A stretch of DNA of 28,894 nucleotides from Bugula neritina (lineage: Eukaryota > Animalia > Bryozoa). Positions within the stretch are counted from its first letter, which is position 1. Each line of letters starts with the position of its first letter. Location: positions 1 through 28,894 of the forward strand of contig CAXIUT010000033.1 in NCBI GenBank assembly GCA_964035545.1. Reading direction: 5' to 3'. Both the position numbers and the translations under genes were made by a program. The notes under the pieces were generated by a model. The model did no database searches and was not told the origin of the DNA. It worked only from the letters and a program-made list of their open reading frames with translations. Shown in pieces: positions 1 through 28,894 of this stretch.

Positions 1-87
1 CCCAACCCCAACCCCAACCCCAACCCCAACCCCAACCCCAACCCCAACCCCAACCCCAACCCCAACCCCAACCCCAACCCCAACCCC
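1..87 (+). repeat. Left telomere, (CCCCAA)n
   Basis: Perfect C4A2 hexamer array from base 1 to 87, followed by AT-rich subtelomeric sequence. This is the Tetrahymena/oligohymenophorean telomere repeat. Confidence 0.98.
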
Positions 88-6816: not shown

Positions 6817-6844
6817 AGAATAAAGAATAAAGAATAAAGAATAA
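6817..6844 (+). repeat. (AGAATAA)x4 short tandem repeat in the convergent 3' intergenic region
   Basis: Four perfect 7-mers lying between the PEX11 stop and the giant-gene stop. Confidence 0.8.
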
Positions 6845-6893
6845 TTTAATATGAAAATAAATAATGTAAAAATGATGAATATTTATGGATAAA

Positions 6894-9800
6894 TCAAGAG
6901 TGAGATCTTTTCTTTTTGGTTTTATCAACTCCATGTATTTTGCTTTGAGCTTTAACAAACCTCTGCATTTTTTCTGCCTCTTATCCCATCTCTGTATTTT
7001 AAGCCTTTATAGTTTCTATAGCTGAAACTTTATTTCTCTGCAAATTGGGATTCAATGAAGTATGTATTTAACTTTTCAAAATATTAGTGTCAGATAGTCG
7101 ATATCTTGATTCAAAAGGCAAACTATTCTCTGCACTTACAAAGATCTAATAGTCAGAGTTATCATCAAGCAATTTAAATTATATCTAACCAACTCCGTTT
7201 CTACTGCTGGTCACGTTGACATAGTGTTGACTGATAACTTGAGTGTTATTCTCATTGTATCCATTAATAACTTGATCTGATAATAAAGTTACACCGTTTC
7301 CAATCTTTTTCAAAATAACAGCATAGATGAAATTGCGACCCCAGAAGGCAACTTTCATCTTTACTCGATCATAATTCTTTTCAGTGATTTTGATAGCATA
7401 ACGAACGCGAGGTACTCGATTGAAAATCTTTTTGACTGGTGATCGATAAGATTTGATATATTATGGAATAAATTCTTTTAACATAGCTTTTGCATCTGCA
7501 TCTTTTTTGAAGTTTCTGAGAAGGTTTATAGGTCGAGTAGAATCATCAATAGGGTTGGGAGCCACCATTGTTTCATAGACATATAATCTTTTATTCATTA
7601 CATTCGATCTAAATGATGACTTCTTTCTGACTAAAATAGTGGAAGTTGTAATAATAAAGATTCTTGATTTTTCAATTCTGAGCACCTAAGAAAGGAATTA
7701 AATATAAGCTGTCTAGTTAATAATTTATTTCATAGCCAGTTTAATAGAAGCAGCATTTGACATTTTCTTAGTTCTGAAATTGAGGAAGAATATCTCTGAG
7801 TTGCCAATAGTTGAGTTGAGATAAACTGCTAGTCTATAACTAGTCTGGGCCTTGAGTCCTGTTGCTAACACAGTTGAAATAGTATTAACTCCTGTTCCTT
7901 GAAGAGCAGCTTTCTGAGAACCATAAGTAACTCCTGAAGTAACATTGTTATCATAGATATCTTTAATATTAATTCTAGTTTTAGGAGTACCTCGAGAAAT
8001 AACAGCATAGTAAACAGTGCCGATATATGAAGTAGTGATAGTAAAGTTAGCTGAGTTAGAACTGGTAGTGCCTTTAATTACCTCATAGACTTATGGAGCA
8101 TACTGCAACACATTAGTAGTAGATTGTTCTGTTGATACTATAGTATGACCTACATCTGTAGATTGTTTTGCTGTACTTGATAGTTCAAGTTTCATGGGAG
8201 ATTAAACTGAGGTCTTGTCAATAGAAAGAGAAGAAGAGTAGTAAACCACAGGATTTTCAATGTAATAATTGTTAGTAGTTAGAGATGAAAGGGTAAAGTT
8301 CTGAGAACAAGCTGCAGGAATGACATCACCTTTGTACTGAACTGTGAAAGAAGCATTGTTTGATTTGGCAGGTATAGTGATTCTATTGGTAGGAATAAAG
8401 GTAAAGTAAGAACTACAGTTAGTTTCAGTCAAAAGGGCAAGAGCAGTTTGAGTAGGAACTTCAAGAGAAATTATGACAGTGATAGCATTGCCTACTGATT
8501 TAGCTATGAAAGGTTGAATCTATATTTTATATTTTCTAGTAGGAAGCTCGATATTAAGAGTGATAAATTGAATATCGTTGTAGAAAATATAGGTTCCACT
8601 TTCCTACTTGGTAAAGGTCACATTGAAAGTGCCTTCTAATCCGTTAGCAGCACTGATGGTAAAAGCCTTTTCTAATTCTCTGTAACTACTGAAAGTTATG
8701 TTAGAAGGTTCAAAAGAAATAGCTGATGATTCGCATGATGGAATTACTGATAAACTTCTTGCTGGTTTTTGTAAAGATATCTTAAACTCTGAAGAAGAGC
8801 CTGCTGAGAATTTGGTGTTACCTGTCACATTGATGGCATAAAGGTGAGTACTGAAAGTTGGACAAACTTCTTTGTTGGAAAGAGTTTGAGAGTAAATGCT
8901 GTTGCCTTTGAAATCAAACAAAGAAATGGTAAACACTGGTAGAACTGTGCAGTCAATAGTTTCATTGGGATTTCTAAACCAGAAAGAAATATTGAAAGTT
9001 GTGAAATCAACTGCAGCAGGGAAAGAAGAAGGCTCATAGATTGCAAATAGATATCTTGGAGAGAGAGTCACATTGCTGGAAGTGTAAGTATCGCTGCCTA
9101 TGCTCATGTTCAGAGCATTGGGAGTTTTGATCTGGTTCCAAATGTCTGCATATTCTTCAGGGAAATGAATTATTACCCCTATTTTTGATTTTTCAGAAAT
9201 TGAGAAAGTAGCTCCACTAGCTGCATCCAAGGTAAAGGTGTAAAGACTTACTGAGAAATATTTATCATTGCTGAGAGTGATTCCTCCGATTTGCATATCA
9301 ATGGGAGGATCGCTAACACTGAAACTTAAAGGACTAGTGAACATCAAAGCTGCCTGAGTGTAACTACTAGTAGTATTAATAAAGGTAAAAGTAAAGTTAA
9401 CTTTTTTAACGTTTGTCTTAGGGTTGAGAAGACCGTTTACTGTTAAATAGAGGAAACTGTTTGCTCGAAGATTTTCTAGAACTGTAGTGAGACCCTTGAT
9501 GGTTATTTTCTGTCCATTCATACCACAAGACAAAACATTAGTACCTTCTTTTAATTTCAAGTTCATGTAATTATCAACTTGTATGTAGTTCTGGTAACCA
9601 CAAGAAATGCCTGCTTCGCTTGCAACTATATCACTTGCTATTTGGATTTCTAGAGTTGAAACTACAAAGTCAGGTTTAGTAATAGCAAAGGTATAGATAG
9701 AAGAATAAAGTCTGTTAAGTGGAGAGTTGGCACTTCTGATAGAGATGGCTTGTCCAGTAGAGGTGATGATAGTACCAGTTGAGCTGCTAGTAACAGAAGT

Positions 9801-12800
9801 AGCTGAAGTAGAAGAACTACTTGATGTGATATAGAAGGAATTACTTTAAGCAGTCATGTAGACAAATCCATTGAAGTTTATCTTAGATTAGAGAGTGTAT
9901 GTTCCAGAGTTAGGATTGGTTATACTACCAGTTACACTTACTAATTTCTGAGCAGTGATTGATCGCAAATATATACTTAGATAAGTAAGTTTTGTGGTTC
10001 CACTGTATTCATTTTTGATATTGCATTAACTGCTGTATAAAGTGGTGCTGTCACTTGTGCAAGTTCCTTTACCAACTGGAGGACTCCAACTCAAATATAT
10101 TCTTAACTATGAAGCTTCTTTTATTGAAGAAGGACAAATTAAACTAAGTTGATATTGGGCAGGCAAATCTGGGTTGCTGATCGAAAGATCCACTTGAAGT
10201 TTGCACGCTTTAACTGTAATGAGAGACAAAACTGGACTTGCAAATGTATTCTAACTGATAATGCTTGGTTTGTAAACGCTGGTAAAATAGAGAGTTTGGA
10301 TCTTAAACTTATATTTTTTGAGGTCAGTATTGGGATTAGTAATATTGGTAACAGTTAAGTAGTAAGGTAGAGTTTGACTAAGTAACACTCCATTGGGTAC
10401 CACTACCAGTTGATAGTTATTGATAATGGAACAATAGGCTTGAGGTCCAGCTAATTTTTGAGAATCAGCTCTTAAGAAACATTTAGAATTTACATTAAAT
10501 AGAGAAGTATAAATTTCAGGGAAAAATATAGCAATTTTGCCTTGTTCAGGAAGATATGAGTTGAGTTGGAAGGAGAAATAGTAGTTAATACCTGAGTCAC
10601 CTCCATAAATAGAGTCAATAGAAGTGATAATAGATGAAATATTTTTAGATGCTTGAGTAAACTTAAGGAATTTGGCAGTACCTAAAGCATCCACTTTACG
10701 GTTAACCACTGTGAAGAGAGTCACTGTTTTATTAACATACTCAATTTAATAGGCAGCATTGAGAAGCTTTGTAATCGTGAAGTTAAAATCTTCTGAAGTA
10801 ATGGAAGAAGAAGGTTGGATGTAAATTTGACTCGCAAGACCAAAGACATGACATTTATTTCCACTTGCCAAACTGCATAAACCTTTTTCGTTAAGGTTAA
10901 ATCTGCCTTCAAATGTGAACTTGGGGAATTGGATGACCAAGTAGTCAGAAGTTGTCACTGTTGCGAATCCAGCTCCAATTTTTCCTTGCAAAGTGTAGTC
11001 AGTAAGTTATCCAACATAATTATTACCTTGTTCAGTCACATTGAAGGTTATAGTTTTTGGTGTGACTGCAGCCGAAGGAGGACCTACTACAAAACTAACA
11101 GGTTCATAGATGTATCCATTGACTCCTCCATAGTTAAAGTAAGTCAGACTGACTCCCAATTTACAATAGTCAGTTATTCCTGAAGGTAGAGTTTTTAGGT
11201 TAGCAAATTGAACACGAACAACACTATTGGCATCAATACGGTCATAACCGGTAATACGGATAGTAGGGTAGGTAATTGTAGAAACAGAAGGATAGATTTG
11301 ACACTTGATTCGACCCATTGTATTGAATGTTAGACCTGAAATATCAAGGCAAGCTATTTAGTCTCCTGCCTGAAGACCAGTACCGAGGTCATTTTTGAAT
11401 GTGTTTGCAAATTCAACCTAAATGGAAGAAGTAATTGAGTTACTGGCTGAGCTATCATATGAAGGAAGAATATCACTAACTCCTAGCGTAAATTGAAGAT
11501 CAAATAATCCCATACTATCACCATCTTCAGGAATACTGAAAGTTATACTAGGAACATCAAGATAGTAGCCATAAACAGTTGTTAGGTTGACATATTGAGA
11601 CTCAACAAGAGCATTTCCTGATGTCCACAAATTAACTTGCATTTGATAGTGATCTCCAGGATATTTGGGTGCAGTGAAAAGTTGGCTGGCACTACTATGG
11701 TCAAGTCCAATCAAGTTATATCCTTGGTTGTAAGTATTACTTGAAGGAGTATAGCTGATAGTGATTTGTGAATTTTATCTTTCCACTCCACAACTAAAGG
11801 TCCAAAGAGAAGTAGTAGTAGGTTGGAGAGTACATCTATTAAGAGATCTAGTTGTTGTATAATTGAACTAACGAGGCAAAAGGAAAGTCATTTTACTGAT
11901 AAGTGAGAGAAGAGGTAGGAGTGGATGGTAGCAAGAAGCCATAAAACATGCACTGTTCTCCGACTTTACAAGTTCGTTGATTAAAAGATTTTGTGTAGAG
12001 ACTGATAACATAAAGATAAGGTAGCAAGAATTATTCGATAGGGAAATTACCAGTTGCCTGGGCTACATAGTAGTCACTACCTGTTGAAGTTTAGTGTGTG
12101 TAAGCATTGGCATACCATGATTTAGAAGTAGTATACTGCCAGTTTTGAATCGTGTATCTGAGGTAGATAAAGATAGATCTTCCCGTAAATTCACTGGTCC
12201 AGTCTGGGAAATCACTTTGGAAGTTAAGTCTGACCCAACTTGTGCCCATTCCTACACAGACAAATCGGTAGGGGTAAGGAAGAGCTTCTCCAGTATTAGT
12301 TTGCATAGTGGCGTTGCAATACTGAGTATCAATGCTAATATCGTTAGAAGAATATAAGTATATTTGTTTGATATTTTTATTTTGGAGCATATGTTTGATT
12401 TCTATTCTAGCGATGTTGTTGAAGCCATATTTGAGTTGATAGTTAGGAGTGAGGGTGGGTGTAAAGGAGATAGATAGAGGTTGCTGGTAGTAGGGTCAGT
12501 ATAGAATAATTCCACCTGAATAGCTGGTATAGAAACGATGGGATAAGACACCTCCTTTCCAAACTTATGAGTAAAATGTGTTTGTACCATAGTATCTTTG
12601 GTATGGATTAGTCATGCCACCTAATTGGAAGCTATAGCTACTATGAGCTGATGAAGCTTTGATCATGATAGTATTAGTAGTGGCATAGGAGTAACATTAG
12701 CCGTTGTTTGAAGTGAGAGTACAGACTGTAGGAATGGGTACTTCACTGTAATAAATAAGTTTGATCCAGTCTCCAGCACTAATGCTGTAGCCAGCACTTA

Positions 12801-15800
12801 CCGTGTGAACAGTGTTAGTAGCACTGACAATGGTTGGGTTGAAGGTAAGTGATCCAGTGGTTCCGATTCCTGGAATATAAGGAGCATTATTGAAAGTCAT
12901 ATAAGTAACTGATTTATAATAAGAACAAAGGTTATTGGAGTCAGACCAGCTGCAAGTGTCAGCCAACTTGAAGACCATTCCAATAGGATAGCTAGAAACT
13001 CCAGGATTAACAATATTCAAAATATTAAATTTGATAAGAGTATTAGCAGCAATATCTTTTGTAATAGGAATAGCAATAGTAGTAGGTCTAGGAGGAGTGG
13101 CTGATTTATCACCTTGGTATACTCTGCATTTTATTACACTGTCAGAAATAACATGAGCCCCGTAGAACTAGCTGCAGTCGAGAGATCCAGGATTCGGGTG
13201 AGGAATAGAAACTCCTAAAGTGTTAGAGAATAGTGTCTCTTGAAGTCCATCTCCAGTAGTAAATTCTAATAAAATTGTATCTCCAGCAGTGGCTGAAACG
13301 TTAGGAGTTACTGAAAATTCATAGAGTGTATTAGCATTGACATAGTCAAGAGCTGAATCGACTGCAAAAGAAGCATGTCCGTATGGTTAAGTCCATACTC
13401 TGTATACTTTTTGTTCGACGATAGTATTGGATTTGAAAGCAAATATTTTGAAGTTGTTCCATTGAATTGAAGGAATTTTAGCACCATAGTGTGTACTTGG
13501 AGCATGAGTATCAACCCAAAGGGTAATCTAATTGTTATGAGTCATGGAATAGTTGAGATAAACAGGAACTTTGAAAATATTTCCACTAACATGAGTAACA
13601 GCTGAAGGAACCCAATAGTTATTTCCATTAATCTGATACTTGATGATTCTTTTGCCTGTTGTAGCAGCATCTAGAACCCAATCTCCAAAATCAACATGAA
13701 GATAATCTCCATTGACAAGAGTATGCGATTTGAGAGTAAATTTGATGTAGAGTGGGAAGGTGCTAGTGGCAGTGTAAGGAGTGATCATAGTTCCTTGTAA
13801 AGCTACATTTTAACTGCCATGAATCAAATCAACATTGAGTGTGAGACTGTCAGTAGTTGCTGAGATGATGTTATTATTTTAACTTGATTTGACTGTGATG
13901 GTGGTACTTGGATTGTATGTTGAATTATTTGTAAGAGATGATTTTATTTTCATCCAGACTGTGATAGATAAGCTGGCACTAGATGCTAAAGCTGCATATC
14001 CACTGATTATTATCTGATTTGAAGCTAATCTCTTGCACACTAAGTTGCTGTTATCTTCTATGCCTTGAATAAAACCACTGTAAGAGTAGCAATGCTCATC
14101 CATAAGTTCAAGTTCTGAGGTAAATTCAATGATCATGTAGCTTCCTTCTGGGAACTGTAAGTAATCAGCAGACCATGAAAGGGTATATTTATCTTAAGAA
14201 TTTGTACCTTCAGTGTTGCTTCCTTTAGTGAAAGATGAGCTAGTCCATGAATTGGCAGCTGAAATAGAGTAAGTAGCTGTGTTAGAATTCGAGTGGAACC
14301 ATGCTTTTCTTCGATAAGTACCTTCAAAAGTTTGTACGAATGTTAGTTGGAAGTTTTGAACGTCAATAGAAGTTGGATAGGTTCCAAGAGAGAAAGTATC
14401 TGCTGATCCTGAACCAGTATATTTAAGTGAGCAGAGGTTGATATTTGGATAGTATTGATATTCATAATTGCTGTTACTGAGGGAAGTAAGTGTGCTAAGA
14501 CTTGTAAGTGCAGGAACAAAATTATTTTTAAACTTGACGAGAGTAGTATCTCCATTTCCAAAGTTGTAGGTAGAATATTTGAAACTTACTGACATTGTTT
14601 TTTGCACTTCATTGTTGCTAAGACTCAAATAGGCATGTTGGTTGGAATTACTTGTTGTACCTGTGCATCTTTGCTTGGCTTCATAATTGTAATAGCTGAT
14701 AATAGTCGGGTAAGGATTTGCACTTGAGTAATGGAGTAATTTGACTTTGTAAGTCAAAGGAACATTAGTACCAGATGGGAAAGTAATAAGAGGGAATCTG
14801 AAATAGTAAGTACTAGAAGTAGAGAGAGCTCCATAGTCAGTGATGGATAGAATTGCTGGAGCCCAATTTTGAGATTAAGAGTTTTTACCGCAACGAATTC
14901 TTGTGTTAGCATTAGGACCGCTTTGACTTGAGAAGTGACTGTATTAGACTCCACTATAAAAAGGCATATTATCAGGAGAAAACACTGAATCAATATTGAG
15001 ACAGTCATCATAGTATTTGGACTCAATTTAGAAAGAAAGGACAGATTCAGTGATAGGAGCTGAAGTAGAAGCAGCGGACAAAGCAAATGAAGGTCTTAGA
15101 TTAAATCCAAGCATATCATAGTATCCACTCTGAAGATGTGCATGATCAACTGAATAAGAGTTCATGTATCCAGCAAAGTCAAGAGTGTAGACATCTCCAT
15201 AGGCAATGTTGAGTTGACTGTTATAGATCAGAGAAATTTATACTCTTTGAGGAGTAGTTGGCATATTGAAAGTACTACTCATCTGTTTTCTGTCGATTAT
15301 AGTCAAGAGATATTCAGTATTGATGGCAAGACCTCCAATAGGAGCCTGAACTGTAAAGGCAGGACTATTGTAAATACATTATTGAGCTTGAAGACCTTGT
15401 CCATAAGAAACATATTGAGTGTTTGTGGGTTGAATGATGCAGAAAAGACCATTGTTTGGAGTAACTGGAGCAGGGAAAGTAGTAGATGAAGAAATAAAGC
15501 GGAATGTTTCGATCTAGGAAATGTCATAAGGAGCTTTAAACTTGAAGAAAAGTTTGCTTGTAGTTTGTCCACTCTTGGCATTTAAAGTTTTTCTTTGGAG
15601 TTAGTAGTATCCTTTAGTATATCTCATATGCTGATAAGTCCACATGTTAGGTGTTCCATAGTTGCTACTCGTGCTGAAACCGACATCAGATGGGCGGAAG
15701 TTGCTTGATCGAATGTTGAACTCTAATTATCCGTTATAGTTATAGACACTGGAAGTATAGTAAATTCTGTTATTACTATTAGCAAACAATCTAACTCTTA

Positions 15801-18800
15801 GATACCAGTGTTGATTATAGACGAAGGAAGAGTCCATCATTCCAGTAATGTTGACAAACCATCTGTTATTGTTAGTGTTGAAGCCAACAGTTGCGCTGCC
15901 AGTAGGATTGATGACTCCTGAGTAGTATCTGAACCAAGCAGTATCAAGTTATCTGACTCCACTTGTGAACTAGAGAAGGATATAGCTCATATTGCGACCA
16001 GAGTAGCCACTAGAAACAGGATCAAAATAGAACTAATAGGTCAGAGGGAAATATTGATGTGAGTTGAAGTGATTGGGTTTAGAGTTGGCTATGATACTGG
16101 GTGAAGAAGTGGCTAAAAAGTCATTGTTTCTATTGTAAGATGAGAAACTGTATTGAGAAACAGTATATATATTATAGGTTTTATAGCCACTATACCATTT
16201 GAAGGATACTTCAAGTCCCTTGTTATAAGTTTCTTTGTCTACTGCATTAGGATTCTTGACGTTATTGATTTCAAAGACAGTATTAGTATTTACATTTCGA
16301 CTTGGTAACTGATAAACAGAGGTGTTTGCTCTTGTATTAACCCACAACTTAGTGTAAGTCATGTAATTATCAGTTATTGAAGCCAAATTTGCAAAAGAAC
16401 TGCAGCAAGTAATACCACCATCAATTTTCATAACAAATTTATCATGTACATTAGAACCACTGGAATAAGGCCAGCCTACTGTTAACCTATGGTCAGTTGA
16501 ACTGCCTCTATAGGTGTTCTGAGGTGATAGACTTCCAGTAGATCTGACTGTGTTTCTGATATCGATGCTGTCAGAGTAGAATACGTTGGGGAAGAAAGAG
16601 GTATACATTTTTTCACCACTTGCATCTCTGTAGTTAGCTCTGATATTGATAGGTACTGCGAATAAGGTTTGTTTGGGAGGGTTATTGAAATTATCAAAAG
16701 CAAGTTGTATATTTTTATTGGCATAAAAACCTCCAAAGTTGAGGACTCTAATAGTGAGAGGAGATGTTCCGTTAGAATCAGGTCCATAGCCAAAACATTG
16801 AACTCCTTCTGATTTACCACTGTATGCTAATAGGTTGTTAATGTAGCAGGGAATTTTGTCTCCGTTTTTAATGTTGAAATAGTTGAGATCTAGATTGTCA
16901 ATAATGAACTCTAGATAGAAGGCGGTGGAAGTAGTTATTTTGAGTGTGAGGTCGATGTAGAGAGAGTTGGTAGTTGCTGCTTCTCTAGTGAGGATGTAAA
17001 TATTGTTGAGGTAGATGGGGTTTTTATGCTGATATTTGAAGACTGAAAATTGGTCGAAATATTTGGTTTGATATGAGCCTTGTTCTCCTGTACCGCTCCA
17101 GACTCGCACATGATAGTTATGAGCACTTGTAGAAGCAGAGATCAGCGCAGAGCTGCTCCCTTAGTTGGCATAGGCTATAATTTAATAATAATAGTTAGGA
17201 GATAAGATATGTGAGGGAATTGATTTGATTAATATCCTTGTACTGTCATAGCTTTTACATCCAATAGTATACTCATCATATAGATGGTAGGCTGTCTTAG
17301 TATATTCTCTGATCAGACATTTGTACTTTGCACTGGAGTAGAAGATGATGGCTTCAAAATTAAGATGGCATTAGATGAACTAGCAACTGCACCATGAGTA
17401 CTTGTGCTATAAACTGACACATACTGGTAGTTATTATTGATTGTTAGTCGAACTGGACCCATATCTGTTCTGAGTTACTTGTAGGCTTGTTTTCTCCAGA
17501 CGATGTCGGTGCTTGGTAAAATGGTTCGGCTGCTGGGATTGTTGGTGATAGTTTTGGTGACATATATCGATCTTCCAAAATCAGAGCTCGAGATATATTT
17601 GTCATAGAGTTAGAATGTGAAAGTAGTACTTGAGGGAACAGAACTTGTTGACAAAGTTATCACTAGAATACCAGTAAAATGTATATCAGAGTTGCTTCTA
17701 ATATTTATGACTGTACTGGATATTACATCACAGTAAAGGGCATTGTTATGGAATGATGGTTTGTTGTTGTAATGTAGATGAACTCCACAGCCATAGAGAG
17801 TGGTGAAGCTGCTGGCAGTGAGTTTGATAAAAGATCCTCTGAAAGGACCAGTAGTTCTTAGGTTGCTGTACAAGGAAAAGCCATTGAGTTGTACACTTAC
17901 AACAAAAGGAGTACTTGAAGTCTTCAGAGTATTTCCAAATATAGGAACAACTACACCGAAGCTGGGAGTAGCTGAGGTGAGAGCAGAATTGCCTCGATTT
18001 GTACTACTAATAGAATAGTAGGTAGAGTAGCCACCTCTTGTCCACCCAAGGTAGCGGTTATAGAAGTTTGTGCTTTGATCTCTGGAATCAGGGAAAGTAG
18101 CAGTTAAATCTATAGTGTTGTAATATTGACTACCATTACGACGAGCAACAAAGAAATACCTTCGATTGATAAAAGAATTATAGACTCTACATTCAACATA
18201 GTTGTTATTGTTGCAGAATGAAGTGGTTGGAATGGGATAATAACTTGAATAATAGATGAAAGGTTGGGAGTAGGTAGCATAGACTCTAAGATACTGGTAA
18301 AATCTTTTGCTTTATCTGACTTTTCCTCCAGCATTCCAGAAATAAGATGACTCATCAAAGTTACGCATTGAATTGCTTGTTCCAGTAGTGCTCAAATAGA
18401 CATGATGATCATATTTCATGTAGGGAGACCAATGGTGGTGAGGAAGGCCATGTTCTTGGATAAAATGCATTGTATTCCAGTAAAAACTCAAAGTTATTCT
18501 GTTTCCATTGGAGGATGACGAAGGAGTTCTGTAGCCTGGGAAGTAGCATCTCAAATAAGAATTAACTGGAACATCTCTTCTAATAGTAATGAATGGTTGC
18601 ATGCCTGATCTCAATGTACGAGTACAGTTGCCATCATAATAAGTGGTTGTTTAAGTGCTAGAAAATCCACTACTTGAATATCTGCAGCGGCATTCAATGT
18701 AGGCTACTTCTTAGCTGGAAGAAGTATGGGGGAATGGATTGTTATCTGCGTAAACAGTGTTGCCACCGGAAGTAAATTACATGATTAACTCTGCGTGGGC

Positions 18801-21800
18801 CCAGTTGGTAAATGAAGTCATGGAAGAAGTGATGGGTTTTTTGATTTTTTGAAGATAGAAACCAAATTAAGTTTAAACATTGTATTGATTACTGACGAGA
18901 GAGGCTGATACTGAATCTGCTAGGGAGTTGTAGGGTTGAGTATATCCAACACCTTGAGTACCTGTGAAGGTAAAGTAGTCATAGCCCATTATTTTTCTAC
19001 AACTGCAATATGTTCGACAGCAAGTAGAACAACATACATATTCATAATATGGGTATGTACTAATATGCCGAGTACAACCCGTTACGCAACAAGGTTGATA
19101 ACAACATCCACAAGTACTTGACTGATAGTAATAATAGCTATTTTACCAAACCATACTTGCTGACACCCATAGATGACGAGGGTAGTTGCCAACATTGCCA
19201 CTAACAGAAGCAAATGTAAAAGTAAATTAGTAAGTATCTCCATTAGAGTAGCTGGGCCACTGGTAAGGATAGCGACTACTAGTTGGTGTGTAGTACATAT
19301 CGAATATAGCATAAAAACGACGAGTATTATCACCTCCATTTCCACAATATACTCCAAAAGCACCAGGATTGTAGGCATTGCCATTGAAGTTATTGGTACC
19401 CCATCGACTTGTCCAAACTGATACACTATTGCAAGTGGTGGTCAGCAATCGAGGAGTATAAAATCTGAAGCCCATTCTAAAAGCTTTATGGAAACTATAT
19501 GAAGTAGAAGCATATAATTTAACTTTAATTTGAGTTGAAGAAACATAAGTAACAGTGGAGTAACCTTAGGTTCTGACATTGTTGCTAGTGGTAAGAGTAC
19601 GAGTTGACCCAGTATTACTTCCACTCAAGTCCATTACATTATTGCCAAACTACATTTAACTGCCACGTAATACACTGTGACCAGTATTCGAAGCATACTT
19701 GATATAATCGTAGTCCCAGTTCTGAGCAGTAGTTGATACGTACATAGGCCATGCTCGATTATTGTAGGCATCTTCATTAGCCCATACATAAACTATTACA
19801 TCGAAATTATTAGGTGCTGAGTTAGTAGTTCCATAGTAGTAGAGGTTAAATCTGGTATTAGTAAACCAAAACACATTTCTGAAGATGACTCTGTTGTTTG
19901 ATCTGTCTACAGTACATCTAATAGGGTTGAGAGGGTCGTTTCCGATCAAACCTGCCTACAAATTGCAATTTTTGCCTGTTGATGATAAAGAATCATACTG
20001 TCTCTTTTCACTACCATCTATCTTGAAGTAAACTTCAACTACTTTTTCTGATGGATCTTATTCGCTTCTACTCAAAGTTGACATGATGTTTCCTGCATTG
20101 ATGGAGGCATAGAACCAACTATTCCACCCTGATATTTTAACTTGAGTATCCAAGTCATACATGCTCATTTGTCCAAATATATTAGTTTTTCTGTGGCTAG
20201 AGATAAAGCTGCTTGGAACTGATGCTGTATAGACTTTGTATGCAGGTTTCAATAGCATATATATTTTATAGCTATTTACGATATGATGTTTCATTCTCAA
20301 TTGTCCGAATGCATGATAGCTACTTATTCCTCCGAAAGGTGAGTAGTTGGAGTGGTTACTTGTACTAGCTGACCATCCTCCAGTATATTTCTTAACAATA
20401 TAGACATAGTGTTCATTTTGACCTTCAGACATGAAGAAGTGATCGTAGGTGATACTAGATGAGTAGACATATTCTCCAATATTTTTGTAAGTATCATCTA
20501 CTAGTTGCCACTTCAGAATGGCATAAGTGTTATTTGTTAAATTTTATTGAGATGTGTAGCAGTGATATTATCCTCCTGTTTGCCAAAGAGATTTGGTTGG
20601 ATAGCAGGACAAGGAACCTGTTGAACTGTAGCCTACAGTAGTATAGATTTTAAAAGCATCTATAAGGTCATGTTCTCCCATGAGTTATGCTCCCATCAAG
20701 TTAGGAGTTGAAAAACTTCCTCCGAAAGCTTTCCATTTGAAAGAAGGAAATACATCTGGAATGTCAGGATTAGTAAATAACATTCTAAAGCTGAAGGTAG
20801 TACTCAAAGTATTAAAACCACTGACATAGATTCTAGTGGGAGATCCAAATCCATTTGAAGATCCTTTCTGATAGTAGCAGTAAACTTTAGAGTAGACTCC
20901 CATTGAACAAGGATATTCTGATCCTGACTGTAATCCCATAAGAGTAGGACTATTATAAATCTTAGTTCCATCTTTATTCACCACAGGAATTTCAATAACG
21001 AATCCATTGATGTCTGTTCTGGTAAGAGTTACATTGAATTCGAGATAGTTGAGAGCTCCTTGGGTTAGAGTACCATAAGTTACAGAAACATCTTGAATTC
21101 CATAAGAAGGATAAATTGCTGATGTGTTCGTTGCTCTGTAAAAGGTATGGAAAGGATCAGGTTCAATGCGATAGGTGACTCCTGAATTTCTGTTGTAGAT
21201 GTCGATTGGCATGCTGACTGTGGGATTGTTGAGGTTAGAAAGGATGAATCCTTCATCTGAGACATCTCTTGGGTTGAGGATTGTGAAGTAGGCAGCTACG
21301 TGTTGTCCATTGGTGAGAGATTGTTGGAACTGCATGGTAATGGTGGAACTTGAAATGGAACAGCTGTGTATTTTGAAGCCATTGAGTCTGCATTCAGGAG
21401 TGTAGAAGTATAGGTCATTGTTTCTTTGATTGAGAGTAGGATAGCTATAAACTCCACTGAAGTCAACTTTAATGTGATGATAGTTTGATCCTGATTGGCT
21501 GGAGAAAGTGGATGGTGCGATGAATTTGAAGGAAAAAGGTGATTTTTTCATATTATCAGCGACACCACTGTTAGTGAAGAAGTAAGAGGCGGGTTACCAT
21601 TCATTGACATAGAGTTCTTCTGGTGTAGAAAGATGACTGTGAAGAGGGTATGTTCCATTGGTATAACCGACTTTATTATGATTAACTGAGCTAAGTTTTG
21701 AACTATCTTGTTTCATGAAGCACCAATTATCACTGTCGCGAGTAATAGTAGGTTTGTCCATTCCATCAGGCCAAGTGTAGTATCTGATGACGAATTGGTT

Positions 21801-24800
21801 GTTATTGGTTGCTGATGCTCTGGCAATTTGTATAGCTAGCCCTGCAGTTTATATTGAAATAGCACTGCTATCAGTGTAACTACTTTTAATGACAGGTGTA
21901 ATCCACATCATTCGATTAGTAATATCGATAACACAATTTTAAACTTCAATGCTTGAGGTAAGATACTAGATACATTGTCTACTTTTGAGTTGAAGGTCAG
22001 TTGTTGATTCATTGGGAAATTGGATGGAAATATATTTGACGAGTGAGGTGGAGTTGGTTGGAGAACTGGTTGACATTCTGAAATAAAGTCTCCAATCATC
22101 TCTCATCTACATTTGTTCTACTGCATAGATTTTTGTAATAGTCCAAGTTGGACTTGAAGGTTCATTGGGAGTCAAAGTTGGGAACAAATCACTGTAATAT
22201 ACTCTCTCACATTAGTCATAAGAATTATAAATAGCATATGCCTTAATAGTAGCTTGAGCTGTTGTTAGTTGATAAGGAGGGTTATAGAATAATCCATTTA
22301 TTTTACCATTTAAAGTAGTTGAACCAGGAGTAAGCAAAGTCAAATCTACTGTACCAACTCTGAAAAGAACTGTTCTACAATTTTACATAAAAATAACATC
22401 ACCTGAACTGCCCAAACCTGGATTATACTTGAAGTTGTTATTGGAATTGGCTGCTTGTCTGAGATCGAATCCAAATTTCATAATATACCAGTCATCTTAT
22501 TTCATAATTTTGGTATTTCTGAGAGAGAAGCTCAAAGAAGTACTTCTTTCTTATCGAATAGCTGAAGAAGAGGCAAAATTTCCAAGATCACTGATAGGAG
22601 TAACAGTAATAGGAAGTAATCTAATACCTCCTTCCATCATCGACCAAACAAATTTACGAGCAGTTGGTTGATCATAAGCATAAATCTGAACTGGAATTGA
22701 TTGACCGATCAAAGTTGAAGGATTGAACACCCAGAAACCAAATTTGAGGGTGCTTGAAGTTGTAATACTTGAACTGAATGAAGAACAGACTATTTTAGTA
22801 GGTTGGCTAGAGCTGGCTTGACCTGGGTAGACTTTACATTTCATTGAGCTAATGGAGCTTTAATAGAGATCGAAGATTAAGTCATCGTTAGCTTTGTAGT
22901 CCATGCCAAGGTCTGCTGAAAAGAGATTTGTTCCATCGAGGGCGACAGTTGGTATTTCTAAGACAATTTGTTGTGTGGAGCTGATGGTGGTTGAAGGTGT
23001 GAGTTTGACCATGATGAAGTTATTTTAGTTGGGGATGGTGACTGTGCTATTGAATTCGAGGGTATTCCAGTTGGGACCATATACTTCAATGTATTGAGTT
23101 TGAGCTTTATTGTTGCTGCAAGAATCACAATAATTTATCTAAATTTATGTTTTATATGAACCGATGCTGGTAGGGAATGGAATACCTTCTGTTCCTGATC
23201 CATGTAAAGTAGTAATTGTCATCTAGAGAACTGTGTTTGCTGGTAAATTTTGATATGATAGAATTTGATAGCCATAGTAATCAGAATTGCCACTGTAGTA
23301 ATTTACTCCACAACCATACTTAAGTTTATTGCTTGGGTTGAAAATAGTGCAAACCAAGTTGGAAGGAGGTGCACCAAAACCTCCATTGTTGTTAGTTATA
23401 GAATTTCTATTAAGGTTGATATAAATTTATCCACTGGAGCCAGTTCCAAAGCTAGAACAGACGAATGTTGAACCAAAATTGACATAAAATTTAAGTTATC
23501 CGGTGTATCCGGTTCTTAAAGGAACAGTTTCTAGCATAGTGAGATCAGGATCAACTTTCCAGGTCAAATTTTGTACAGGCATAATAAAGCTAGTTGTCAA
23601 GTAGTCGATTGTTTTGGCATGGGTGAAGGTGTCAGATGAATGTTGATTTGAGTAGGTAGCTATGAATCCCATACCGAGAGTATTGACAGGAACAGTTGGA
23701 AAATCAATTACTCCAAATATTTTTACTTGACTACCAGCGGGTAACTCAGCAAAACCTGTTATAATCCAGGAGTAAGTATTTTGTACATTGCAGCCCACTT
23801 CACCTTGAACGTTAACTGCAGGTTTGCCAGTATCGTAGCCATATAGAGCAGATCCTAGAGTTACTGCTGATCGACAGTGTTGTTTTATTGCTGGAACTGT
23901 GCTTGAATTATTGGGAAACTTTATTTATATTGATCCTCCTTTAGGAACTTTGTGTTGAACTGTAAAACTAACAACCACTTAGACATCTTTCTGTCCTACA
24001 TTGAGTTTATTTTGTGAGCCAACCACTTAAAATTCATAACTAGAGATAATTCCTCTCAACTCAAGCCATCTGTAAGAAGCAGTGACAGTGTAGGTAATGG
24101 TTTATGTCCATCGACCTGAACGGAAAGTAAAGCACTGGAAAGTAGTATCAACTCTGGAGATAGAGAGAGGTAGTTGCGAAATGAAGGGTTGAAGAGCAAT
24201 CAAAGACCCATTTCCTATTTTGACAGCTAGCCAGTTAATAGTTGGGAAGATGATACAATATTTATAGAAGGGGTTTTGGCAGTTGTAGATGTTTCCACTG
24301 AGAGGGAACTGAGGATCTAAGTCAACAATCCACCAGTCATCTTCATTGAAAGATCCAGCGGAGTAGGGAGTAATATTGAAAAACTGATCGCTTTTGCCTA
24401 CTGAGGCACCTGCTTGGAAGAAGTTGGTTGTGCTATCGGGCTAATTTCTGTTGGTGATGCCTGCTGATACCATATCGATGAACATGTTGTACTTGGTATG
24501 ATAGAGAGGTGTTTCAACATTAGTAGTGACTGAAACAGTATCTACTTCAAGTAAAAAGTTGATATCAATTTGTTTTGAGGTAGGACTTTTTATTTTTGCA
24601 ATAATGACTCTGAATGTTGTATCAGCTGGAATAGGTTCAAAGTTAATGATCTATATCCAGACATAGTAGTTGTTAACATTTGATTTTCTCAACTTACAAA
24701 ACATCTATTTCCCTGAAGAAGCTTGTACGAATCCACTGGCTGTCTAAAAATGACAAGGAAGAACGTTTCCTTCAGTTAGAGTAGTAAAACCAAGATCAGA

Positions 24801-27800
24801 TTCGAAGATAGCTCCATTTCCATCATTTGTTGGAAACCCGATTCTTATTCTACCGGCATTAGCACCATCATTATAAGAGGGAATGGCATTGGCACCATTT
24901 TTGAACTAAACTGTGAAGATGTTATGCAAGCCGATATCTCGAATAGCCCATGAAACATTGAAATAACCTATATCATCAGGAAGGATGTCAACCATTTGTT
25001 GGACTTTTTATAAAATTTAGGTTGAACTTTGGTTCACTATTTCCAGTTGTATTTTGTATCGTCCTTGGGCGGTAGGATAGTATATTCCATTTTTGTTTTG
25101 ATATTCTGTTGTGATGTTCAGACTGTTGGTTCCTGCAGTAAAACTGCTGTTGGTGTCAGTGACACTCACTACGAAAGGATTTATTGAGTAGGAACAGGCG
25201 AATCTTATGTCATTGAGGAGACAACTAATAGGTAGACCAAGAGAATTGGTTGCTGGTTTGAATTATGAAGGGAAAGTTACGACTAATTTAGATCCATTGA
25301 TGACAGCTGAAGTATCATAGGGATCAAAGGTGATAAGCATGTGTCCGAAGTATCCTTTGGTGATTGCTCTTGTGGAAGTTGAGTAAGCTGGGACACTGAA
25401 GCTGGTGAGTACATCTAGGTTGGTGTTGGTGAGAGGAGTGGTAGCAAAAGGAACATTGAGGGCATGATCAACAATGGCTCCATTTCCATAATATGTTTTG
25501 ATGGTGACAGTAGGTGATACAGTTGATGCTGTATTGGTACTGGTCATTCTTAGATTAATTTTGAAGTTAGTGTTTGCTGGCACATCATCCAAATTATGGA
25601 TAGTAACTGTTGTTCCTCCAGCTACCATTTCACACAGAATTTGTCTGCCATCATAGGCACTAGCAGTAGTTACTAACTAACAATGATCAGAACTCAAACT
25701 AAAAATATTGTTGATTGTAATTATTATTTTAGCATTGCCTGATTGAGTAACTAAGTTGTTGGCTGTTGTCCATTCGATAGTGTAGAAGTAGTCGGCATTG
25801 GGATGTAGTTGAGTGATTGTCTCATTGGCATGGAAGTTATAGACTGTGTTTGTTAGTGTATCAGGGGTGATAGTGACATCGAAATAACCTTTTTTGGCTG
25901 TACTTCTGCTCTTGTAAACTCTAGTTTGGAACCTGAAGTCTCCACTATAGGCTGGAGTAGTTATAAAAGGGAAAGTCAAGGATGCTGATGTTCCAAGACC
26001 AGCTGAAGGGTATAGAAGGAAATATTGAATAGGAATATCAAATTTAGAGCAGGTGTGAGTACCGCATTAAACAGTTTAGCTTCTTCCGATGTTAGGGAAA
26101 GCAGTCTGGTCAACTTCAAAGACAAAATATTCTGGGTCAGTAGATGCAAGGTCATAGCTGTTGAGGGTGATGTTGGTAACTTTGTTGATGACTGAGTTGG
26201 TGAGTGTGATGCTTGGAGTTTCTAGATTATAGCTGTAACTTCCTCCACCAGTATTGGTATTTACATCGACAGTTTGAGTATAGATATAGACGATAGGAGA
26301 TGTGAATCCAGGAGTATCTTCAAGAATTGAAAACTTCAAATAAGCATAGTAGCCACTATTTCCACTTCTTTGCATTTTAGGTATTTAGAAAGTAATGCTG
26401 CTTCCTCCTTGAATAGTTTACAGTCCATAGAAGGTGACATAGTGGTAGCTGGTTGAAAGTTGTGAGGATTTGTATGGACCTGAAGTCCAAGTGATATAGT
26501 CGCATTTAACATATGGATCAGCTGAGATTCCTCCGAACATCAGACAAGGGTAATCAGGAATAACTTGGTTGGAAGTTCCAGTCCATCCATACCAACTATT
26601 TGGCGTAGAAAATTCTACTCTGAAGAAATGGATGTGTCCTGCATCATTGAGGACTTGATTAGGAGTTGTAACTGTGCATCTAACATGGTCGTATTCTCCG
26701 ACATTTCGGTTGATAGAAGTACATGAAAGAGTGCTGATAGGTATTGAGTCAGGTATCCACTAATCAAAGATGACTTCTAGGGGAGTAGGAGCAGGACTTT
26801 AGTTGCTATAGAATTGTATTTCAAAGAAGTATCTCTTGACAAGAGTATCTATAGTAATACCTTGGTTTTCAGGTTGCTGGAAACCTTCAGTAGTAATGGT
26901 CAGAGGCACCTCGCTCTGCTGGAAGTTGAAATCGATAGGAGTGTAGATAGTTACTACTGTTTTGGTGGGATCAGTTGAATTAAAACTACAATTTTTGGCT
27001 GGAATATCATAATAGAAATAACACTTAGGAACACCATTCAATGCAGTGATAGGTGCTGGAATATTAGGGAAGATATCGATGACGATTTAACCATAAGTGA
27101 GGACATTAGTTTTTGGCAAGTTATTTCTCAAGAAAAGGACGATTTAGATAGGACCTGTCTTGGCTACTGGTAATTTGATTGGACTTTGCATGGGATGCAT
27201 TTTCATCTCCTTGATGTAGCCAGTAGTTTTATTGATAGTGATGCTTCTTGTATATCGTTGCGCAAGTCCTCCATTTTGCCTGTAAGCACTAATAGTTAGA
27301 CTATAGGTGCTATCATCTAGAGGAGTTCTTAGAGGTTGGAAAAAGATGAGTTGTTTTGATTTCAGAATAGAAGAGAAGTCATATAGTTTGAGAGTAGTTG
27401 TATTAGCGGTAGTATTTTGTTTGACACTCCATTTGGCTTAATTTTGAGGGCTAGAAGAAACTCCTGTGATGATTCTGGTTGCATTGGTGAAGAGTGTCCA
27501 TTGTCCTGTGAACTAATAGGTGATATAATCTCCAGGTTTGAGATCTGTGTGAGCATTGATTTTGAATATATAGGTGACTGAGTTGTTTCTATACATGTTG
27601 GGTATGTTAACATCAGCAACTAAAGGTTTTTGTCTTACCACAGAAGTTGAAGTTGAAGTGATTACTTCTTGAACAATGATGTTGTTTGGCTATAGAATGT
27701 GTACTTCAATACCTGAAACAGTCGTCTGGTAGTTTGGATTCACTAATCCAGATAAAATAACTGTTATTTTTCCTGATAATTGTGTTTTCAAGTTGAGGCA

Positions 27801-28478
27801 ATCAAAAACATTTTGACTAGGAAATACTCTAGTTGCCATATTGGGATCAACTACTGAGGAAACATTACATTGAACTCTGTTAGAAGCGAATCCTTATGGG
27901 AAAATAAACCTCAAAGATGATTGTGCAGGGTAGGCTTTAGAAGGAGTGAAAGTAAATGTCCAACTTGCTCCCTGTTCTATGTAGTAGTTTCTGTAGTTGT
28001 AGAACTTTCCTCCTGAAGTGGGGACTGGAGCCTTTGTAAAAGGAGTTCTTCCAAATTCATTATTACTGGTAACTACAACATTCTGGAAAAGAGTTTCCAC
28101 GATGAAGTAGCTCGATACTGGGTGGTCGATTGGGTTGCGGATGTTGTCGATAACGATAGTCATGTTGCCGATGGGGATTCTATCGGTCCACATAGTGAAT
28201 TGATACCTGAAGACTTTCCAGGTCGCATTTCTGAGAGGTTAATCTCCAATGGCGTATCTGATTCTTGAGGCTTTTGCGAGGTGATTGGGTCTAAACTCGA
28301 AGGGGAAGGTGATGGCCACTTGTGCATTGGATGCGATGTTGGTGTCTGTGTGGAAGAGGAAGGAGTATGAAGTGACTTCATCTACAGTAGTTTAGACAGG
28401 CAAGATATAGTAGGGTTTGATTTTTTGCATCTGAGCTAGTCCCAGAAGCAAGATGATTAGGCAGAGGGATTTAATCAT
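6894..28478 (-). CDS. Giant (~7,190 aa, ~800 kDa) predicted secreted beta-rich repeat protein
   Basis: ATG 28478 begins MIKSLCLIILLLGLAQ (signal-peptide-like). With TAR=Glu, more than 20 minus-strand ORF-track fragments merge into one reading ending ...KTKKKRSHS-TGA (6894-6896). It is interrupted only by local frame breaks near 17342, 12505/12480 and 11901 (net zero). S/T/N/Y-rich, with recurring I.FP, C..C and (I/V).NP motifs. Confidence 0.88.
28431..28478 (-). other. Predicted N-terminal signal peptide of the giant protein
   Basis: M-I-K, then the hydrophobic core SLCLIILLLGL, then small residues (G-L-A-Q). Cleavage site not computed. Confidence 0.75.
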
Positions 28479-28789: not shown

Positions 28790-28894
28790 GGGGTTGGGGT
28801 TGGGGTTGGGGTTGGGGTTGGGGTTGGGGTTGGGGTTGGGGTTGGGGTTGGGGTTGGGGTTGGGTTGGGGTTGGGGTTGGGGTTGGGGTTGGAG
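28790..28894 (+). repeat. Right telomere, (GGGGTT)n
   Basis: G4T2 array to the end of the window, with one G3T2 unit near 28862 and a terminal GGAG (probable read errors). Confidence 0.98.

What the first reader, a model, noticed from the sequence alone, without database searches (positions are those of the whole stretch)
11200..26700. Nine degenerate ~630-aa super-repeats with no obvious DNA-level repeat
A motif of the form hydrophobic-E-(F/I)...(DLG)...G..(P)C...C...P..I....F...(I/V).NP recurs at about 26615 (RVEFST), 24839 (RIGFPT..DLG), 22958 (VLEIPT..DLG), 20993 (VIEIPV), 18779 (IMEFTS), 16911 (YLEFII), 15030 (SFEIES), 13266 (LLEFTT..TLG) and 11414 (EVEFAN..DLG). Spacings are 1776, 1881, 1965, 2214, 1868, 1881, 1764 and 1852 nt (mean ~1900 nt). 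A second marker, EDDW, recurs at 24344 and 22499. Each unit appears to hold several ~130-170-aa beta-sandwich subdomains, suggesting an ancient higher-order repeat and a periodic filament or molecular ruler.
Basis: partly seen in the sequence, partly recalled or inferred. Interest (0 to 1): 0.78.

Follow-up and report, generated by a model that had tools for sequence, protein, structure and literature searches.

The report
Giant ciliate protein with nine four-domain cassettes
A small ciliate chromosome that rode along in an animal genome assembly carries one roughly 7,200-residue gene for a secreted protein of about 46 beta-sandwich domains, 36 of them in nine very old, heavily diverged copies of a four-domain cassette; the family has no name and its function is unknown.

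Summary
The window is a complete 28.9-kb ciliate macronuclear chromosome with C4A2/G4T2 telomeres. Its minus strand carries one gene of about 7,194 codons (28478..6894), readable only with TAA/TAG as glutamate (peritrich code).

An iterative profile links seven anchors and finds nothing between them. All nine units share conserved cysteine pairs at about +40/55, +200, +340 and +510, so each holds four domains of about 155 aa (a-b-c-d).

In-phase similarity persists with the anchor domain removed: 71 window pairs against 29±10, reached by 0 of 2000 phase shuffles. U1 and U7 align in phase over 324 columns.

Four organisms with the same code have collinear, uninterrupted orthologues (51-67% identity, 0.5-2% gap columns). 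A homologue at about 25% identity shows the same cassette order and about 620-aa period. The array is therefore ancient and not homogenised, and the gene has no DNA repeats.

The fold is a generic Ig-like sandwich. There are no Pfam, PDB or named relatives.

A conserved signal peptide, no membrane segment and invariant cysteines point to a long extracellular rod. The "ruler/filament" reading is untested.

The window copy has four 1-nt frame breaks, probably assembly errors.

The scan's index lists no other report of this protein on other DNA.

The parts
1..87 (.). Telomere, (CCCCAA)n
   Evidence: Read directly from the window end.
28790..28894 (.). Telomere, (GGGGTT)n. The window is therefore a whole macronuclear chromosome.
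   Evidence: Read directly. The window is all of contig C42 of G000.
6894..28478 (-). Giant gene of about 7,194 codons. ATG at 28478, stop TGA at 6896..6894. TAA/TAG (about 110 of them) are read as Glu.
   Evidence: TGA-only frames. Start codon and signal peptide are conserved in orthologue L010. The gene is collinear with uninterrupted orthologous ORFs.
28425..28478 (-). Signal peptide (MIKSLCLIILLLGLA...)
   Evidence: Hydrophobic N-terminus, conserved in L010. The cleavage site was not predicted with a tool.
26652..28424 (-). N-terminal region (residues about 19-609). Beta-domain-like, but not demonstrably a cassette.
   Evidence: No significant hit of the cassette type HMMs or of hhalign. 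No Pfam family in the orthologous 1,409 aa.
24876..26651 (-). Cassette U1 (residues 610-1201; anchor 26615)
   Evidence: Cys pairs at relative positions 36/50, 196/201, 324/340, 477/486. hhalign U1 against U7 aligns in phase over 324 columns, probability 73%. The c-type leave-one-out hit scores 20.5 bits. The anchor domain itself is not recovered by HMM.
22995..24875 (-). Cassette U2 (1202-1828; anchor 24839; EDDW at 24344)
   Evidence: Leave-one-out a 31.5, c 12.5, d 10.0 bits, all in the right segment. Cys pairs. EDDW.
21030..22994 (-). Cassette U3 (1829-2483; anchor 22958; (TAR)DDW at 22499)
   Evidence: Leave-one-out a 25.2 bits. Cys pairs 53/70, 341/354, 535/545. The (TAR)DDW site is.
18816..21029 (-). 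Cassette U4 (2484-3221; anchor 20993). It is the longest unit because of the Cys-rich insert at 19112..18999.
   Evidence: Leave-one-out a 24.6 bits. Cys pairs and the 12-Cys insert are present in all five species, with variable sequence in the insert.
16950..18815 (-). Cassette U5 (3222-3843; anchor 18779). It has the most diverged anchor domain.
   Evidence: The anchor is not recovered. Cys pairs are in phase. There are 10 in-phase window pairs with U6. Slot 5 is also the one missed in L008.
15069..16949 (-). Cassette U6 (3844-4470; anchor 16911)
   Evidence: Leave-one-out a 29.0 bits. The AF2 model of 16036-17160 shows two sandwiches of about 155-160 aa.
13305..15068 (-). Cassette U7 (4471-5058; anchor 15030)
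   Evidence: Added by the iterative HMM. Leave-one-out a 12.9 and c 17.0 bits. hhalign with U1.
11451..13304 (-). Cassette U8 (5059-5676; anchor 13266)
   Evidence: Leave-one-out a 32.7 and d 10.1 bits. Six Cys pairs, all invariant.
9591..11450 (-). Cassette U9 (5677-6296; anchor 11414)
   Evidence: Leave-one-out a 37.6 bits. Cys pairs in phase.
6897..9590 (-). C-terminal region (6297-7194). It holds related domains out of cassette order, then about 470 Cys-free residues ending in a basic tail. No membrane segment.
   Evidence: SW hits from here to the b/c domains of U7-U9 are out of phase. No type-HMM hit. Translation read by eye. No Pfam family in the orthologous pieces.
17304..17345 (-). 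Frame break 1 (1-nt indel)
   Evidence: The orthologues read straight through and keep the ..YKCL(V/I)REY.. stretch. My earlier 20-nt intron model is rejected.
12486..12530 (-). Frame breaks 2 and 3, a compensating pair. Between them the uncorrected frame shows an in-frame TGA at 12498..12496.
   Evidence: The orthologues read ..DPTS.. there. That reading appears in another frame of the window.
11894..11911 (-). Frame break 4 (1-nt indel)
   Evidence: tblastn of L002 against the window switches frame here with no loss of residues.

Best explanation
Shown. The window is a complete macronuclear chromosome of a ciliate that reads TAA/TAG as glutamate (peritrich nuclear code). The ciliate is present as a cobiont in an animal genome assembly. 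Its largest gene (28478..6894, minus strand, about 7,194 codons, no introns needed) encodes a protein with a conserved signal peptide and no membrane anchor. The sampled parts fold as beta-sandwich domains of about 135-170 aa, and nearly all cysteines are invariant pairs. Residues 610-6296 are nine copies of a four-domain cassette, a-b-c-d, of about 620 aa. The copies arose by duplication of the whole cassette, and this happened before the sampled organisms with this code diverged. A homologue at about 25% identity has the same nine slots. The copies have since drifted beyond BLAST recognition without homogenisation, while each cassette remains 51-67% identical to its orthologue.

Inferred. 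The product is secreted and forms a long extracellular, or secretory-lumen, rod: about 46 domains, roughly 200 nm if fully extended. The cysteine pairs would act as disulfide staples. It would serve a structural or adhesive role, for example in the surface coat, stalk, holdfast or lorica matrix. The retained type-specific features, the conserved cassette number and the conserved length suggest that each position in the array is individually constrained. Where it sits in the cell and what it binds are unknown.
For: Chromosome and code:
- Telomeres at both ends.
- TGA-only frames of 3,774, 1,694 and 1,905 codons.
- Opposite TAR codons the orthologues have 148 Glu against 35 Gln, and the log-likelihood favours Glu by 310 nats.
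- A TAR codon sits at the invariant Glu of WDTAGQ-E-RF in the Rab-like gene on the same chromosome.

Super-repeat:
- Leave-one-out and iterative HMMs link seven anchors spaced 590-655 aa, with no hits between them.
- The in-phase excess without the anchor domain is 71 against 29 +/- 10, reached by 0 of 2000 shuffles. It is repeated in L007, with 70 against 34 +/- 11 and 6 of 2000.
- hhalign aligns U1 and U7 in phase over 324 columns at score 47.9, against 24.5 for the best reversed control. Of 21 hits above control, 13 are in phase.
- Leave-one-unit-out type HMMs fall in the right segment 18 of 36 times (binomial P = 0.001).
- In-phase Cys pairs occur in all nine units, and 90 of 107 Cys are invariant.

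Age and conservation:
- Uninterrupted collinear orthologues L002, L004, L006 and L007.
- 37 gap columns in 6,743 aligned positions against L002.
- L008, at 23-26% identity, shows a-b-c-d order and about 600-660 aa spacing.

Fold and secretion:
- AF2 gives an all-beta model.
- Foldseek matches tandem Ig-like adhesin arrays at E = 1e-7, and VIA-align gives Z up to 8.1 on generic sandwiches.
- The signal peptide is conserved, and there is no membrane segment or hydrophobic C-terminus.
Against: - Domain type b is supported only by its Cys pair and order, not by profile scores.
- Two anchor domains (U1, U5) are not recovered by sequence.
- The repeat of the phase test in L004 is weak (125 of 2000).
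- Optimal pairwise identity does not separate same-type from different-type domains (about 0.29 for both).
- The structure models have low confidence (pLDDT 60 and 48), and the fold matches are generic.
- The window copy has four frame breaks that I cannot check against reads.
- Function and location rest on sequence features alone. No expression, proteomic or localisation data were found.
Confidence: 0.75

Rival explanations
1. There is no higher-order repeat. The protein would be a plain tandem array of one beta-sandwich type, and the nine anchors would be eye-picked chance recurrences of a loose motif.
For: BLASTP of the protein against itself finds nothing at E < 1e-3. Two of the nine anchors fail leave-one-out. 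Pairwise identity does not separate same-type from different-type domains.
Against: The anchor profile hits one site per about 620 aa and nothing in between. The phase-shuffle test without the anchor domain gives 0 of 2000. U1 and U7 align in phase over 324 columns. Cys-pair geometry is type-specific and in phase. Type assignment is right 18 of 36 times, P = 0.001.
Confidence: 0.04
2. The primary repeat is a two-domain unit of about 310 aa, copied about 18 times. The 620-aa period would only reflect alternation of two subtypes.
For: There is a secondary bump in window similarity at a phase difference of about 0.4-0.5. Out-of-phase hhalign hits at offsets of 312-378 link domain a to domain c. 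The a-type HMM weakly hits c domains of U1 and U7, and the c-type HMM hits the a domain of U9.
Against: Profiles for a and for c each recur at about 620, not 310 aa, in the window and in L008. The Cys spacing differs between a and c, and between b and d. This fits an older a-b to a-b-c-d duplication that came before the nine-fold cassette amplification, so it is a deeper layer of history and does not replace the cassette reading.
Confidence: 0.15
3. The window copy is a decaying pseudogene and not a working gene.
For: There are four frame breaks (about 17340, 12525, 12490 and 11905) relative to uninterrupted orthologues. One creates an in-frame TGA at 12498..12496. No second copy exists in the assembly.
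Against: Apart from these single-base shifts there is no TGA in about 7,190 codons, whereas the other frames across the whole 28.9-kb window carry about 190-330 each. Identity to the orthologues is even along the gene. Two of the breaks form a compensating pair about 35 nt apart, which is typical of consensus errors in a low-coverage cobiont contig.
Confidence: 0.1
4. One reading: the nine cassettes form a molecular ruler or a periodic filament. The about 620-aa period would match a periodic partner, as titin's super-repeats match the thick filament.
For: The cassette number is conserved, with nine slots in the window and in L008. Length is conserved, with 0.5-2% gap columns. Type-specific features are retained after very long divergence.
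Against: No partner, no localisation and no periodic structure has been tied to it. Length conservation is also expected for any chain of folded domains. There are no data beyond sequence.
Confidence: 0.12

Closest known systems
Titin / twitchin / obscurin A-band super-repeats (7- and 11-domain patterns of Ig and FnIII domains), and nebulin 7-module super-repeats. This comparison rests on my own knowledge, not on a tool result.
   Same: A giant chain of beta-sandwich domains in which a fixed order of distinct domain types recurs many times. Domains at the same position in different super-repeats are more alike than neighbouring domains. The copies are old and diverged.
   Different: Those proteins are cytoplasmic, lack signal peptides and structural disulfides, and are recognised by Pfam (I-set, fn3). 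This protein has a signal peptide and invariant Cys pairs. Its domains are about 155 aa with no Pfam match. The organism is a ciliate.
Bacterial and fungal surface adhesins built of tandem Ig-like domains (SdrC, ClfA/B, FnBPA, Bap, AgI/II, SpaD pilins, Als)
   Same: They are the best structural matches: Foldseek E = 1e-7 to 1e-4 and VIA-align Z about 6-8. They are secreted, rod-like arrays of sandwiches of about 130-160 aa.
   Different: There is no sequence relationship (no PDB hit at E <= 1). TM-scores are about 0.2. The matches are generic for the fold. Many such adhesins have near-identical repeats visible in DNA, whereas this gene has none. No LPXTG or comparable anchor was seen.
The roughly 5,500-aa secreted 'lectin-bead' protein noted on another contig of the same ciliate (earlier finding s1-435673)
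   Same: Same organism, same genetic code, signal peptide, giant modular secreted protein.
   Different: By that note it has 15 near-identical domains on acidic linkers. The present protein has about 46 contiguous, strongly diverged domains with a four-domain higher order. I did not compare the two sequences.

Membership tests
Peritrich nuclear genetic code (NCBI table 30) | TAA and TAG encode Glu; TGA is the only stop | tested here: met
   Of 359 standard residues aligned opposite TAR codons, 148 are Glu and 35 are Gln. Glu beats Gln by 310 nats. A TAR codon sits at the Glu of DTAGQE in the Rab-like gene. TGA-only ORFs of up to 6,801 codons occur in the orthologues.
Ig-like beta-sandwich fold (fold level only) | Two-sheet all-beta sandwich domains in tandem | tested here: met
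   The AF2 model is all-beta, with pLDDT 76-85 in the anchor domain. Foldseek gives probability 1.0 and E = 1e-7 to tandem Ig-like arrays. VIA-align Z is at most 8.1, in the range the tool itself calls 'may mean only a common arrangement'. Domains c and d are only poorly modelled.
MSCRAMM / DEv-IgG adhesins (SdrC, Clf, FnBPA) | Sequence family membership (Pfam or PDB sequence match), cell-wall sorting signal, bacterial origin | tested here: not met
   No Pfam family in about 6,000 aa scanned. No PDB sequence hit at E <= 1. The gene is eukaryotic, on a telomere-capped chromosome. The C-terminus is hydrophilic and basic.
Titin-like super-repeat proteins | Domains are Pfam I-set or fn3; cytoplasmic | tested here: not met
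   No Pfam hits. The signal peptide is conserved.
Titin-like super-repeat proteins | A fixed order of distinct domain types recurring with a constant period | tested here: met
   a-b-c-d order with a period of 588-738 aa, nine times. The same order and spacing appear in L008.
Extracellular structural or adhesive protein (functional class) | Actually secreted and found outside the cell or in a secreted structure | not testable with these tools
   There is only indirect support: the signal peptide, the absence of a membrane segment and the invariant Cys pairs.

The most novel reading that the evidence does not exclude
The nine-cassette rod is an extracellular counterpart of titin. It would be a length-defining or periodically binding scaffold of a peritrich-specific secreted structure (stalk, holdfast or lorica fibrils). 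Each cassette, roughly 20 nm long, would match one period of that structure. That would explain why cassette number and length have stayed fixed over a divergence deep enough to erase BLAST-level similarity between cassettes.
Probability: 0.12. Interest if true: 0.75.

Novelty: new variant of a known kind. Interest (0 to 1): 0.45.

Why it matters
Giant proteins with higher-order domain repeats are best understood in muscle, where the period of the repeat matches a periodic partner. This looks like a secreted example in a protist. Its family has no Pfam model, no solved relative and no named member, and gene callers using the standard code cannot see it, so every database copy is a short 'hypothetical' fragment. 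It could give ciliate biologists a candidate building block for a peritrich extracellular structure, most likely the stalk, holdfast or surface coat. It is also a clean case of a repeat array that was fixed early and never homogenised. If the function turns out to be only generic matrix or adhesion, the value is mainly descriptive.

Tried and rejected
1. Introns. Earlier notes on this genome describe 20-22-nt introns, so I modelled a 20-nt GT..AG intron at 17326..17307 and a 28-nt one at 12551..12524. The orthologues read straight through both places, so these are 1-nt frame shifts and not introns.
2. TAR = Gln (table 6) was my first translation. It is rejected in favour of Glu.
3. The nine-anchor HMM finds no extra domains above controls. 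The N-terminal 609 aa and the C-terminal 898 aa could not be shown to be further cassettes.
4. A MAFFT alignment of whole units is noisy outside domain a and was used only as a guide.
5. Global pairwise identity does not tell domain types apart.
6. The block-by-block hhalign dot-plot was dropped as too slow. Unit-level hhalign with alternative alignments was used instead.
7. The ESM Atlas gave only unnamed clusters at 0.86. Pfam, PDB sequence search and cluster names gave nothing.
8. The second AF2 run (cassette U8 of L006, thin alignment) gave pLDDT 48. It shows little beyond all-beta secondary structure.
9. Literature searches found no description of this family or of peritrich secreted giant proteins.
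10. No tRNA gene lies on the chromosome.
11. The window pieces were never joined across the frame breaks. They were analysed apart, or with X at the break, and tools were given only stop-free stretches by reference. A search or fold of the whole joined product was therefore left out.


Full report
WHAT THE WINDOW IS. The window starts with (CCCCAA)n and ends with (GGGGTT)n. It is the whole of contig C42 of a 216-Mb, 321-contig assembly. Under the bacterial code it has no ORF longer than 358 aa. With TGA as the only stop, the minus strand opens into frames of 3,774, 1,694 and 1,905 codons. It is therefore a complete ciliate macronuclear chromosome. Earlier notes of this scan say the assembly is of a bryozoan with a ciliate cobiont; I did not test the host identity.

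GENETIC CODE. I marked TAA/TAG as unknown and aligned the gene with its orthologues. Of 359 standard residues opposite TAR codons, 148 are Glu and 35 are Gln. Using substitution frequencies from the same alignments, Glu beats Gln by 310 nats. On the same chromosome a Rab-like GTPase gene has TAR at the invariant Glu of WDTAGQ-E-RF. This is the peritrich nuclear code (NCBI table 30; that this code is known from peritrichs is my own knowledge).

GENE MODEL.
- The ATG is at 28478 and opens a hydrophobic signal peptide. The orthologue L010 keeps it.
- The stop TGA is at 6896..6894, giving about 7,194 codons.
- The frame changes four times: near 17340, near 12525 and 12490 (a compensating pair that exposes an in-frame TGA at 12498..12496), and near 11905.
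- I first modelled introns there, prompted by the 20-22-nt introns noted elsewhere in this genome.
- Four orthologous loci carry uninterrupted TGA-only ORFs of 5,547-6,801 codons, cut only by the ends of the fetched loci. They read straight through all four places with no residues missing.
- The breaks are therefore single-base indels. They are most likely consensus errors in a low-coverage cobiont contig, less likely real lesions. No other TGA occurs in the coding frames.
- I kept the four pieces apart throughout, or put X at a break.
- The composition is rich in Ser, Thr, Asn, Ile and Tyr, with 1.5% Cys. There is no membrane segment and no hydrophobic C-terminus.

CHECK OF THE OBSERVATION. 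All nine motif sites are at the stated coordinates, and the spacings follow by subtraction. EDDW is at 24344 and (TAR)DDW at 22499. There is no tandem repeat inside the gene, and direct repeats are only chance matches of 24-31 nt. BLASTP of the protein against itself finds nothing at E < 1e-3. The 'no DNA-level repeat' statement is correct.

IS THE SUPER-REPEAT REAL?
(a) Leave-one-out profiles of the anchors. Four anchors score 21-25 bits, one 11.5 and one 8.4, against control maxima of 5-10 bits in an 11-fold larger shuffled or reversed database. Three fail.
It gathers nothing in between. This domain type therefore recurs once per about 620 aa and not at every domain.
(c) Smith-Waterman scores of all 100-aa windows. 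Scores of at least 60 occur 51 times in the real sequence and 12 times in the shuffled one. Plotted against the difference in position within the unit, the excess peaks at zero. This holds even when all windows touching the anchor domain are removed.
(d) Phase shuffles. Shifting each unit's phase at random gives 29.3 +/- 10 in-phase pairs of at least 48, against 71 observed. None of 2000 shuffles reaches 71. The same test gives 70 against 34 +/- 11 (6 of 2000) on orthologue L007, and 33 against 19 +/- 8 (125 of 2000) on L004.
(e) hhalign on five-species profiles of each unit. U1 and U7 align in phase over 324 columns outside the anchor (137-460 with 136-460, probability 73%, score 47.9). The best reversed control scores 24.5. 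Of 21 hits above that control, 13 are in phase.
(f) Cysteines. Of 107 Cys, 90 are invariant in every orthologue present. All nine units have a pair at relative positions about 35-70. Six or seven have a tight pair near 195-210, eight have a pair near 325-372, and seven or eight have one near 465-560.
(g) Four segments were cut around those pairs. Type HMMs were built without the tested unit and then scanned over it. The best hit fell in the right segment 18 of 36 times, where 9 are expected (binomial P = 0.001). By type: a 7 of 9 (13-38 bits), c 5 of 9 (U1 20.5, U2 12.5, U7 17.0), d 4 of 9, and b not detectable by profile.

Together these results show nine cassettes (26651..9591) of four domains each. 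The N-terminal 609 residues and the C-terminal 898 residues contain related-looking domains but no demonstrable cassette. Weak a-to-c cross-hits, and a bump at half a period, suggest an older two-domain duplication underneath.

FOLD.
- AF2 on 16036-17160 with 17 orthologous fragments gives an all-beta model (mean pLDDT 60; 76-85 in the anchor domain).
- VIA-align delimits two sandwiches, model residues 43-203 and 203-365. This fits four domains of about 155 aa per cassette.
- The best matches are generic Ig-like sandwiches with Z at most 8.1.
- Foldseek ranks tandem Ig-like adhesin arrays first (SdrC, Bap, ClfB, FnBPA, Als, integrin alpha legs) at E = 1e-7 to 1e-4, but with TM about 0.2.
- A second model, of a whole cassette, is poor (pLDDT 48) and shows only beta strands.

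RELATIVES.
- The word search with a 375-aa stop-free piece found 16 fragments at 42-59% identity.
- Their contigs (Logan DRR438463, SRR14578334 and SRR24908198; ENA ERZ19568784) carry collinear orthologues at 51-67% identity over the whole length.
- Gap columns number 37 of 6,743 against L002 and 136 of 6,613 against L004.
- A profile search of 1.84 billion representatives found 113 hits. All are short fragments (45-1,366 aa), nearly all matched in a single stretch, and none has a name beyond 'hypothetical protein'. This is what standard-code gene calling makes of such a gene.
- One distant hit lies on a 62-kb JGI contig (L008). Its giant gene is 23-26% identical and collinear with U6-U10.
- The type HMMs, which were not trained on L008, hit it in the order a-b-c-d with spacings of 575-664 aa or multiples of that. 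They mark seven of nine a-slots, missing slots 5 and 7, which are also the weak ones in the window. These hits may be driven by unit-to-unit orthology. They show conserved architecture and are not an independent proof of paralogy.
- In G000, the closest relative of the L008 gene is the window gene itself, and there is no second copy.
- No Pfam family was found in about 6,000 aa scanned, including the N- and C-terminal parts. There is no PDB sequence hit.

HOW IT MOST LIKELY WORKS.
- Shown: the signal peptide, the lack of an anchor, a chain of beta-sandwich domains in the parts that could be modelled, near-invariant Cys pairs, nine conserved cassettes, conserved length, and no homogenisation.
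- Inferred: the protein enters the secretory pathway and forms a long, disulfide-stapled rod outside the cell or inside a secretory compartment. About 46 domains at roughly 4-5 nm each give about 200 nm; the per-domain length is taken from my knowledge of Ig-like domains.
- Such a rod would be structural or adhesive. In a sessile peritrich the obvious candidates are the surface coat, scopula, stalk or holdfast matrix, or a lorica.
- The Cys-free, basic C-terminal 280-470 residues may be an assembly or attachment module.
I give it about 0.12.

COMPARISON AND NOVELTY. The architecture works like the super-repeats of titin-family proteins and nebulin. The protein fails their membership tests: no I-set or fn3 domains, and it is secreted. 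Structurally it resembles bacterial and fungal Ig-like adhesin rods, but it has no sequence relationship to them and, unlike many of them, no recent repeats. I file it as a new variant of a known kind: an undescribed protist family of secreted giant beta-sandwich proteins with an ancient four-domain higher-order repeat. The literature searches found no description of it.

VERDICT. Interest is 0.45.

Noticed in passing
window 1-87 and 28790-28894: Both ends carry C4A2/G4T2 telomere repeats. The 28.9-kb contig is therefore a complete ciliate macronuclear chromosome sitting inside an animal genome assembly.
   Followed up: partly
window 5199-5810 (+): A Rab-like small GTPase gene. A TAR codon sits at the invariant Glu of the WDTAGQ-E-RF motif, which gives a one-line confirmation of TAR = Glu.
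   Followed up: partly
window 4261-4926 (-): A ribosomal protein uL16/L10e gene (Pfam PF00252, E = 6e-16 on its stop-free part). One in-frame TAR sits where I recall relatives having an acidic residue; that comparison is from memory.
   Followed up: partly
A Cys-rich insert is present at the same place in all four orthologues, but its sequence and length vary.
   Followed up: partly
window 17304-17345, 12486-12530, 11894-11911: Four single-base frame shifts relative to uninterrupted orthologues. Two of them form a compensating pair about 35 nt apart. They are probably consensus errors of a low-coverage cobiont contig. Other ciliate contigs of this assembly may have the same problem.
   Followed up: partly
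window 6810-6844: The heptamer GAATAAA is repeated 4.9 times about 50 nt downstream of the giant gene's stop codon, probably in its 3' UTR.
   Followed up: no
window about 5830-6400 (+): A simple repeat that translates as a (GV)n run lies in a TGA-free frame between the Rab-like gene and the giant gene. It is probably non-coding.
   Followed up: no
window 207-1490 (-), 3053-4159 (+): Two further TGA-free frames of 428 and 369 codons have AT-rich, low-complexity translations. They may be genes or spacer.
   Followed up: no
L008 (JGI 3300056850 contig Ga0558718_04239): The distant homologue also shows two frame changes within 19 kb, giving three overlapping TGA-free frames. This could be assembly error or something real.
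   Followed up: no
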